DNA from: Octopus bimaculoides
Lineage: Eukaryota
Assembly (NCBI RefSeq): GCF_001194135.2
Contig: NC_068986.1
Location: forward strand, 103,591,023 to 103,655,022
Direction: 5' to 3'
Length of the DNA: 64,000 bases
The first letter of the stretch is position 1; each line of letters opens with the position of its first letter. Both the position numbers and the translations under genes were made by a program. Positions 48,362-48,757 of this stretch are shown here, piece by piece. Under the pieces are notes generated by a model. The model did not search any database, was not told the origin of the DNA, and saw nothing but the letters and a program-made list of their open reading frames with translations.

Positions 48362-48386
48362 CCTCCGGCTAGAAGATGGACAGCAT
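48362..48386 (-). pseudogene. Third, frameshifted copy of exon 1 (pseudo-exon)
   Basis: ATGCTGTCCATCTTCTAGCCGGAGG|GTAAG. It equals the 48533 copy minus a 19-nt deletion between two TATG microhomologies, so the ATG frame hits TAG after 5 codons. The donor is retained. Confidence 0.75.
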
Positions 48387-48532
48387 ATTAAATTAATTAA
48401 TTTACCTTCATATAACATAAACAAACATCATACCTATTTATATAAAGAGAAATATACATATCTGTGTGTGTATACATCACATTATATTATTATATATCAT
48501 ATATTATTATTATATATTATATTTATTCTTAC

Positions 48533-48576
48533 CCTCCTGCCAGAAGATGTACAGCATAACCTCCAGATGTAATCAT
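48533..48576 (-). CDS. Duplicated, intact copy of exon 1 (candidate alternative first exon): MITSGGYAVHLLAG(G)
   Basis: ATG ATT ACA TCT GGA GGT TAT GCT GTA CAT CTT CTG GCA GGA GG|GTAAG. Open frame, same phase-2 donor. Expression is unproven. Confidence 0.5.
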
Positions 48577-48716
48577 ATTAAATTAATTTACCTTCATATA
48601 ACATAAACAATATACAGCATCTCAGGTGTTAAACATCACACCTATATATATAAAAATAAATATACATGTGTGTGTATACACCACATTACATTATTATATA
48701 TTATATTTATTCTTAC

Positions 48717-48757
48717 CCTCCGGCCAAAAGATGGACAGCATTATCTCCAGATGCCAT
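48717..48757 (-). CDS. slc25a36: Coding exon 1 of mitochondrial pyrimidine nucleotide carrier (SLC25A36/33, Rim2 family): MASGDNAVHLLAG(G)
   Basis: Minus strand reads ATG GCA TCT GGA GAT AAT GCT GTC CAT CTT TTG GCC GGA GG|GTAAG. It is 41 nt with a phase-2 donor that joins in frame to exon 2 (GG+A = Gly). It matches the family N-terminus (human MSQRDTLVHLFAGG, recalled) and has a promoter-like block just upstream. Confidence 0.9.

What the first reader, a model, noticed from the sequence alone, without database searches (positions are those of the whole stretch)
48362..48757. Triplicated first coding exon of the pyrimidine-nucleotide carrier, with one duplicate apparently under coding constraint
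Seen: three copies ending in GG|GTAAGAAT, with donors at 48717, 48533 and 48362. The middle copy keeps ATG, frame and phase (MITSGGYAVHLLAGG vs MASGDNAVHLLAGG). All three differences in its AVHLLAGG core are synonymous (GTC/GTA, TTG/CTG, GCC/GCA), while amino-acid changes fall in the variable N-terminus. The third copy has a 19-nt frameshifting deletion. Reading through the first donor gives GGA GGG TAA, so use of the middle donor from the upstream promoter would turn exon 1 into a uORF. Inference: an alternative first exon or alternative donor giving an N-terminal isoform or translational/NMD control. Three sites are too few to prove selection.
Basis: partly seen in the sequence, partly recalled or inferred. 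Interest (0 to 1): 0.75.

Follow-up and report, generated by a model that had tools for sequence, protein, structure and literature searches.

The report
Triplicated start exon, second copy occasionally spliced
A short tandem repeat has copied the first coding piece and splice signal of an octopus-like mitochondrial pyrimidine-nucleotide carrier gene three times. Nearly all RNA uses the first copy, a few reads in one sample use the second, and none use the third, so this looks like a young exon duplication rather than a proven new protein isoform.

Summary
On the minus strand there are three copies of "…CATCTTyTrGCmGGAGG|GTAAGAAT", ending at 48717 (A), 48533 (B) and 48362 (C). They form a ~184-nt tandem unit made of the exon 1 coding part plus the first ~140 nt of intron 1. 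The gene is an SLC25A36/33-type mitochondrial carrier.

At least 10 DNA runs from at least 8 samples of the species hold the words of the array, so it is not an assembly artefact.

RNA starts only upstream of A, at about 48945-48967, beside the only GC-rich stretch with CCAAT boxes. A is joined to exon 2 (30049) in every RNA data set examined. B is joined to exon 2 in one of three raw RNA runs. That rests on at least 3 reads that share one end and may be PCR duplicates. C is never seen in RNA.

The repeat unit carries no 5'UTR or promoter. In a read-through transcript, ten AUGs precede B's ATG. B's exon part is more diverged from A (15-17%) than its intron part (4%). The non-coding copy C also differs from A only synonymously.

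B is therefore a duplicated donor in occasional use. Coding constraint is suggestive (nominal p about 0.01-0.03, partition chosen after the fact) but unproven.

The parts
48960..49090 (-). Promoter region. It is the only GC-rich stretch (52-55% GC against 21-29% in the repeat) and has a CCAAT box and an inverted CCAAT box.
   Evidence: Sequence read (gaccaatggc, gattggtcga; CpG-rich). GC profile. RNA coverage begins just downstream at about 48945-48967.
48758..48955 (-). 5'UTR of exon 1. It is present only upstream of copy A. It contains one uATG at 48937 and an A6/A7 length variant at 48792.
   Evidence: RNA depth in X21-X23 and contigs of X1, X2 and X16. uATG listed. Insertion seen in 10 of 17 reads in X21 only.
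48717..48757 (-). Copy A: the working first coding segment (MASGDNAVHLLAGG, phase 2), with donor GTAAGAAT at 48709-48716.
   Evidence: Joined to exon 2 in X22, X23, X1, X2, X16, X17 and X18. About 6 reads in X21 end exactly at 48717, consistent with splicing there.
48577..48716 (-). Intron part of repeat unit 1, the interval between A and B. It holds 8 AUGs with short ORFs and a TATATATA stretch at about 48644-48651.
   Evidence: Alignment of units. uAUG list. Low-level unspliced RNA contigs in X1, X2, X14 and X16 at 2-16% of the exon depth.
48533..48576 (-). Copy B: an intact ATG, frame and phase (MITSGGYAVHLLAGG), with donor GTAAGAAT at 48525-48532. It is occasionally spliced to exon 2.
   Evidence: sequence. 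(X21 unaligned read ends carry the B sequence). (3 reads ending at 48533; zero depth in X22 and X23). (Mito_carr score equals that of A).
48387..48532 (-). Intron part of repeat unit 2. It is 96% identical to unit 1 over aligned bases, with 5 indel events.
48354..48386 (-). Copy C: a truncated copy that is 19 nt shorter than B. Its ATG is out of frame, the AVHLLAGG codons are still readable, and the donor GTAAGAAT is intact. No RNA was seen.
   Evidence: No reads, apart from 3 X21 reads on the 30-nt stretch that is identical to the sequence upstream of B.
47510..47696 (-). Two older, ~73% identical partial copies of the unit's intron tail (TTAACACCTGAG…AATTAATT). They show earlier rounds of duplication.
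   Evidence: (families D10, D11, D13, D15).
29807..30049 (-). Exon 2 (243 nt), encoding [23 protein letters not shown]… It is the shared acceptor for donors A and B.
11772..11849 (-). Exon 3 (78 nt), encoding [26 protein letters not shown]. The later exons lie outside the window.
   Evidence: The X1 contig's unaligned end at 29807 matches this sequence. tblastn. Sequence.

Best explanation
This is an evolutionarily young tandem duplication. The unit is about 184 nt, with two extra copies, the last one truncated. It spans the coding part of exon 1 plus the first ~140 nt of intron 1 of an SLC25A36/33-type mitochondrial carrier gene, in an intron start that has duplicated repeatedly before.

The duplication copied the ATG, 14 codons and an identical 5' splice site (GGAGG|GTAAGAAT). 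It did not copy the 5'UTR or the promoter. Transcription therefore starts only upstream of copy A, and the cap-proximal donor A is used in nearly all transcripts.

Donor B has the same intrinsic strength. It is a duplicated, normally bypassed donor that is occasionally spliced to exon 2. This was seen in one individual or sample, which carries a different 5'UTR genotype.

Most likely the B transcripts come from RNA that reads through donor A. That RNA would carry A as a 14-codon uORF and ten AUGs ahead of B's ATG, so it would be poorly translated. Copy C is silent.

Shown: the structure, the DNA reality, the dominant use of A, the B-to-exon-2 junction and the absence of C RNA. Inferred: the 5' end of B transcripts, their poor translation and the lack of selected function.
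For: - Structure and non-chance.
- DNA support in many samples.
- The transcription start and the only GC-rich/CCAAT region lie upstream of A. The unit starts at the ATG.
- A joined to exon 2 is the only junction in X22, X23, X1, X2, X16, X17 and X18.
- X22 and X23 have zero depth on the interval and on B.
- B joined to exon 2 appears in X21 only. X21 carries an A6/A7 variant that is absent from X22 and X23.
- Unspliced contigs run from exon A across donor A into B in X1 (48567-48741). In X16 one runs from the exon A donor (48719) through B to 48506. Depth is 2-16% of the exon depth.
- Ten upstream AUGs precede B's ATG.
- B's exon part differs from A at 6-7 of 41 bases, against 5 of 118 for the intron part (Fisher p = 0.013-0.034). 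This is not what a conserved exon looks like.
- Copy C has no in-frame ATG, yet it differs from A only synonymously.
- Six random substitutions leave the ATG and an open frame 57% of the time.
Against: - All three A/B differences in the family-conserved core are synonymous, and the amino-acid changes lie in the tail that varies across animals. Nominal p is 0.013-0.028. The chance that 6 random changes keep both the ORF and the core is about 1%.
- In X21, B junction reads are not rare relative to A (roughly 3-4 against about 6).
- No X21 read covers 48697-48716, so read-through from A is not directly shown in that run.
- Three reads ending together at 48616, about 30 nt downstream of a TATATATA stretch, could mark an internal start rather than PCR duplicates.
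- Only about 6% of each raw run was read. Contigs drop rare variants, so B use may be under-detected.
Confidence: 0.6

Rival explanations
1. Copy B is a working alternative first coding exon. It would be used from its own start site inside the A-B interval, or by regulated donor choice, to make a carrier with a different N-terminal tail (MITSGGY- instead of MASGDN-). Protein-level selection would keep its core.
For: - Intact ATG, frame and phase, and an identical donor.
- The B-to-exon-2 junction is seen in X21.
- Changes in the conserved core are synonymous only, with replacements in the tail that varies across animals.
- The Mito_carr score equals that of A.
- Three reads end together at 48616, downstream of a TATA-like stretch, and there is no X21 coverage at 48697-48716.
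- Tandemly duplicated initial exons with their own start sites are known, for example UGT1A and Drosophila hydra (PMC9013439).
Against: - No promoter or 5'UTR was duplicated, and the interval is 21-29% GC with no GC-rich, CCAAT-type promoter region like the one upstream of A.
- B is absent from X22, X23 and five contig sets.
- The evidence may rest on one or two molecules.
- B's exon part is more diverged than its intron part, and its synonymous sites are far more diverged than the intron rate predicts (Poisson p = 0.002).
- The non-coding copy C shows the same synonymous-only pattern.
- The whole-exon synonymous excess is not significant (p = 0.15).
Confidence: 0.17
2. The duplicated donors serve regulation. 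Switching from donor A to donor B would turn the A coding start into a uORF and load the leader with AUGs. That would lower carrier output by translational repression or NMD-like decay.
For: - Read-through gives a 14-codon uORF ending at TAA just past donor A, plus eight more short uORFs before B's ATG.
- Both donors are joined to the same acceptor.
- RNA continuous across donor A exists in several runs.
Against: - There is no evidence of regulated switching. B use was seen in one sample, which has a distinct genotype.
- Unspliced contigs at 2-16% of the exon depth are what ordinary nascent RNA gives at the 5' end of an 18.7-kb intron.
- Nothing shows conservation of the arrangement.
Confidence: 0.1
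3. The three copies are an assembly artefact, for example haplotypes stacked in tandem, and the 'B' reads come from an allele of a single exon 1.
For: - The window has N gaps nearby (47971-47980).
- X21 has a different genotype from X22 and X23.
Against: - At least 10 DNA runs from at least 8 samples hold 92-94% of the 31-mers across 48300-48800.
- Independent contigs span from A's donor to B's donor.
- X21 RNA reads carry B's ATG preceded by the intron tail of unit 1, not by the 5'UTR.
Confidence: 0.03

Closest known systems
Tandemly duplicated initial exons used as alternative first exons (human UGT1A; Drosophila hydra), as reviewed in PMC9013439
   Same: Homologous copies of the first coding exon lie in tandem, each with its own donor, and all join one common downstream exon. 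As in hydra, the duplication has been recurrent.
   Different: In UGT1A and hydra, the copies carry or acquired their own promoters and are established isoforms. Here the unit begins at the ATG with no 5'UTR or promoter. One copy dominates, one is used rarely, and one is dead.
Tandem exon duplication giving mutually exclusive homologous exons (general class: PMC9013439, PMC9741552, PMC8373072). The SLC25A3 phosphate-carrier exons 3A/3B are an example from the same protein family, cited from my own knowledge and not checked here.
   Same: It arises by local tandem duplication of an exon with its flanking intron. The copies keep frame and phase, and the differences sit in the less constrained part of the segment.
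   Different: Those events are mostly ancient, conserved and highly expressed, and they involve internal exons with both splice sites. This one is young (intron parts 96% identical), involves a first exon with a donor only, and has no demonstrated protein product.
Alternative or cryptic 5' splice sites created by short tandem duplication, with cap-proximal donor preference in first exons (established splicing knowledge, not tested here)
   Same: Identical donors lie 184 nt apart and compete for one acceptor, and the cap-proximal one wins in most transcripts.
   Different: The downstream donor here is preceded by a complete alternative start codon and an in-frame coding segment. Its use can therefore, in principle, still yield a full-length carrier.

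Membership tests
SLC25A33/SLC25A36 (Rim2-like) mitochondrial pyrimidine-nucleotide carriers: identity of the host gene | Mitochondrial carrier (Mito_carr, PF00153) repeat | tested here: met
   The exon 1-3 peptide scores 64.4 bits (isoform A) and 64.6 bits (isoform B) against a cut-off of 22.3.
SLC25A33/SLC25A36 (Rim2-like) mitochondrial pyrimidine-nucleotide carriers: identity of the host gene | Carrier signature P-x-[DE]-x-x-[KR]-x-[RK] after helix 1 | tested here: met
   [10 protein letters not shown] is encoded in exon 2. These columns are invariant in the alignment of homologues.
SLC25A33/SLC25A36 (Rim2-like) mitochondrial pyrimidine-nucleotide carriers: identity of the host gene | The closest named relatives belong to this subfamily | tested here: met
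   Every named hit that carries a functional or family name is SLC25A36, SLC25A33, 'family 25 protein 33/36' or Rim2-like, or the generic 'mitochondrial carrier protein'. Identity is 37-59% over 88-100% of the 121-aa query.
SLC25A33/SLC25A36 (Rim2-like) mitochondrial pyrimidine-nucleotide carriers: identity of the host gene | Three carrier repeats (~300 aa) and pyrimidine-nucleotide transport | not testable with these tools
   Only exons 1-3 (121 aa) lie in the window. Transport needs an experiment.
Tandem-duplicated alternative first exons | Homologous exon copies in tandem inside one gene | tested here: met
   Three copies, against 0.01 expected by chance. They are present in many DNA runs.
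Tandem-duplicated alternative first exons | Each copy keeps a start codon, the frame, the phase and a donor | tested here: inconclusive
   A and B meet this. C has the donor but no in-frame ATG.
Tandem-duplicated alternative first exons | Each copy is joined to the common exon in mature RNA | tested here: inconclusive
   A is joined in all runs. B is joined in 1 of 3 raw runs, on at least 3 reads that may be duplicates, and in none of 5 contig sets. C is never joined.
Tandem-duplicated alternative first exons | Each copy has its own transcription start or promoter | tested here: inconclusive
   The unit lacks the 5'UTR and promoter, and the GC-rich CCAAT region lies only upstream of A. Three X21 reads ending at 48616 could be a start or could be duplicates. 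No cap-mapping data are available.
Tandem-duplicated alternative first exons | Conservation or purifying selection on each copy | tested here: inconclusive
   The core has 3 of 3 synonymous changes (nominal p 0.013-0.028), but the whole exon gives p = 0.15. The exon is more diverged than the intron, and the dead copy C shows the same pattern. Sister-species loci could not be reached with these tools.
Alternative 5' splice site use with a uORF consequence | Two donors joined to the same acceptor | tested here: met
   Unaligned read ends at 30050 carry the A sequence in X22, X23 and X1, and the B sequence in X21.
Alternative 5' splice site use with a uORF consequence | B transcripts start at the A promoter (continuous RNA across donor A) | tested here: inconclusive
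   Contigs in X1, X2 and X16 run from exon A or its donor into B and could be nascent RNA. In X21, no read covers 48697-48716.

The most novel reading that the evidence does not exclude
Copy B is a newborn functional alternative first coding exon of a pyrimidine-nucleotide carrier. It would have its own start site in the duplicated intron segment (around 48616, downstream of a TATA-like stretch), or genotype- or tissue-specific donor choice. It would be kept open by selection on the helix-1 core while its N-terminal tail diverges quickly. That would be a tandem exon duplication caught at the moment it becomes an isoform.
Probability: 0.15. Interest if true: 0.5.

Novelty: new member of a known kind. 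Interest (0 to 1): 0.3.

Why it matters
Most known alternative exons derived from tandem duplication are ancient, so the first steps are rarely seen. Those steps are a duplicated splice site competing with the original, usage that may vary between individuals, and a copy that may or may not come under selection. This locus offers one dominant copy, one occasionally used copy and one dead copy side by side in an essential mitochondrial carrier gene. If the second copy proves to be translated or regulated, it would be a clean natural example of isoform birth. If not, it is an ordinary young duplication, and its main practical value is as a warning for gene annotation, which could report spurious alternative isoforms here.

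Tried and rejected
I therefore inferred junctions from unaligned read ends at exon 2 and at the donors.
- A search for more raw RNA runs found only X21-X23. All 8 read-laying runs and all 4 run searches are used.
- Sister-species comparison was not possible. DNA run searches returned only organism A. The one RNA contig labelled organism B (48634-48844) is 100% identical to the window and stops before B. The protein collections returned no hit above about 60% identity across the query, so no close (octopod) orthologue was recognisable.
- The full-length protein cannot be built, because only exons 1-3 are in the window. I located them with tblastn using a human SLC25A33 sequence recalled from memory. 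I treated that as a lead and confirmed it by RNA contig ends and by named homologues.
- I rejected an assembly or haplotype artefact.
- I rejected reverse-transcriptase template switching as the source of the B junction. B-specific bases begin only 5 nt from the junction.
- I rejected B as an internal cassette exon after A. No joints were seen, and the candidate acceptor at 48621-48622 would shift the frame and hit a stop (read from the sequence).
- Inverted repeats near the donors are AT-only low complexity, so I did not pursue them.

Full report
**What is there**

On the minus strand, the gene's first coding segment occurs three times in tandem.
- Copy A runs from ATG 48757 to 48717.
- Copy B runs from ATG 48576 to 48533.
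- Copy C ends at 48362.
- Each copy ends in GGAGG followed by GTAAGAAT.

A 25-nt pattern across the exon end and donor matches exactly three times in the window, against 0.01 expected from shuffles.

Alignment shows a unit of about 184 nt, made of the coding part of exon 1 plus the first ~140 nt of intron 1. The unit begins at the ATG. The 5'UTR (…gagaaaagtctgcat) is not repeated. Instead, B and C are preceded by the intron tail …aaattaatttaat.

C equals a B-like copy that has lost 19 nt between two ATGs. Its ATG is out of frame and runs into TAG, although the AVHLLAGG codons remain readable.

Two older copies of the unit's intron tail, ~73% identical, lie further into the intron at 47640-47696 and 47510-47576. 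The start of intron 1 has therefore duplicated repeatedly.

**Host gene**

- Exon 2 is 30049-29807 and exon 3 is 11849-11772. Both are defined by RNA contig ends and by sequence. Later exons lie outside the window.
- The 121-aa product of exons 1-3 matches Mito_carr, at 64 bits against a cut-off of 22.
- It carries [10 protein letters not shown].
- Apart from generic labels, its named homologues are all SLC25A36, SLC25A33 or Rim2-like.
These carriers supply pyrimidine nucleotides to mitochondria (PMC8470663).

**Is the array real?**

Ten or more DNA runs, from at least 8 samples and 4 studies, hold 92-94% of the sampled 31-mers of 48300-48800. Independent contigs span from donor A to donor B. 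RNA from a further individual carries B together with its upstream unit junction. An assembly artefact is excluded for practical purposes.

**RNA evidence**

Coverage begins at about 48945-48967, just downstream of the only GC-rich stretch (52-55% GC, with CCAAT and inverted CCAAT boxes). The repeat itself is 21-29% GC.

In raw runs X22 and X23, depth is zero on the A-B interval, on B and on C. All exon 2 junction ends carry the A sequence. Contigs of X1, X2, X16, X17 and X18 also join only A to exon 2.

In raw run X21, the unaligned ends at the exon 2 acceptor have the B sequence (7 reads, agreement 0.92).
- On B itself, three reads stop exactly at 48533 and extend 83 nt to 48616.
- One unspliced fragment covers 48547-48696.
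- No read covers 48697-48716.
- About 6 reads end exactly at 48717, consistent with splicing at donor A.

The three B reads share one end. They may be PCR duplicates, or they may mark a fixed 5' end. About 6% of each raw run was read.

X21 also carries an A6/A7 variant at 48792 in 10 of 17 reads. It is absent from X22 and X23, so X21 is a different genotype.

Contigs of X1, X2, X14 and X16 run unspliced across donor A at 2-16% of the exon depth. That is compatible with nascent RNA at the 5' end of an 18.7-kb intron.

C has no RNA.

**Coding potential of B**

B keeps an ATG, the frame, the phase and the donor. Its product scores as well as A's against Mito_carr.

If B transcripts start at the mapped promoter, B's ATG is the eleventh AUG. 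Ahead of it are the 5'UTR uATG at 48937, A's ATG (a 14-codon uORF ending GGA GGG TAA), and eight more with short ORFs. Such an mRNA should be poorly translated. This last point is an inference from the scanning model of translation.

**Test of constraint**

A and B differ by 6 substitutions plus an in-frame 3-nt insertion. An ungapped alignment gives 7 substitutions.
- Three differences are synonymous, and all three lie in the AVHLLAGG core.
- Three are replacements in the N-terminal tail.
- Across animals the tail is variable and the core is conserved, so the split into tail and core is biologically reasonable.

The figures:

| Test | Result |
|---|---|
| 3 of 3 core changes synonymous, under neutrality | p = 0.013-0.028, depending on mutation model |
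| 3 of 6 synonymous over the whole exon | p = 0.15 |
| 6 random substitutions keep the ATG and an open frame | 57% of trials |
| 6 random substitutions keep the ORF and leave the core unchanged | about 1% of trials |

Two observations count against selection on B.
- The frameshifted copy C also differs from A only synonymously (TTG to CTA).
- B's exon part is more diverged from A (15-17%) than the adjoining intron part (4.2%; Fisher p = 0.013-0.034). Its synonymous sites are far more diverged than the intron rate predicts (Poisson p = 0.002).

The exon and intron parts seem to have different histories. One possibility is gene conversion of the intron part. The signal is suggestive but not proof.

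**Conclusion**

The best reading is a young tandem duplication that copied the start codon, 14 codons and an equally strong donor, but not the promoter. The cap-proximal donor A is the working one, B is an occasionally used duplicate donor, and C is dead.

Its interpretation is partly supported: the alternative donor is used in one sample. An N-terminal protein isoform, an independent first exon and regulatory use all remain unproven.

The closest known cases are tandemly duplicated initial exons such as UGT1A and Drosophila hydra, and the wider class of alternative exons derived from tandem exon duplication (PMC9013439; PMC9741552, PMC8373072). This locus differs in being young, lacking a promoter in the extra copies, and being dominated by one copy.

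Noticed in passing
window 48533-48757 versus 48387-48716: The exon part of copy B is three to four times more diverged from copy A (15-17%) than the intron part of the same repeat unit (4.2%). This is the reverse of what a conserved exon beside a neutral intron should show. It suggests separate histories, such as gene conversion of the intron part.
   Followed up: partly
window 48792: There is a homopolymer length variant (A6/A7 on the gene strand) in the 5'UTR. It is seen in 10 of 17 reads of RNA run X21 and in none of X22 or X23. X21 is the same run that shows donor B use.
   Followed up: partly
window 47510-47696: Two older partial copies (~73% identical) of the unit's intron tail (TTAACACCTGAG…AATTAATT) are separated from copy C by about 650 nt of TATACA-type tandem repeats. 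The start of the intron is a zone of recurrent duplication.
   Followed up: partly
window 48937: An upstream ATG with a 31-codon ORF lies in the normal 5'UTR, if transcription starts upstream of it. RNA coverage reaches 48946-48967 in several runs.
   Followed up: no
window 48717-48746: The spliced contig of run X18 (depth 180) breaks only 29 nt into exon A. This may reflect a polymorphism in the N-terminal codons of copy A in that sample.
   Followed up: no
window 48634-48844: An RNA contig from a run labelled as a different organism (organism B, X14) is 100% identical over 211 nt, including 83 nt of intron. That points to a very close relative, a labelling issue or cross-contamination.
   Followed up: no
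window 48651-48664 with 48702-48715 and 48518-48531: A 14-nt AT-only segment is 93% complementary to intron positions +2 to +15 after both donors A and B. It is probably low-complexity chance, but in principle it could mask either donor.
   Followed up: no
window 47610-47640 and 49299-49329: A 31-nt segment in intron 1 is 84% identical to one upstream of the promoter. It is a small repeat flanking the exon 1 region.
   Followed up: no
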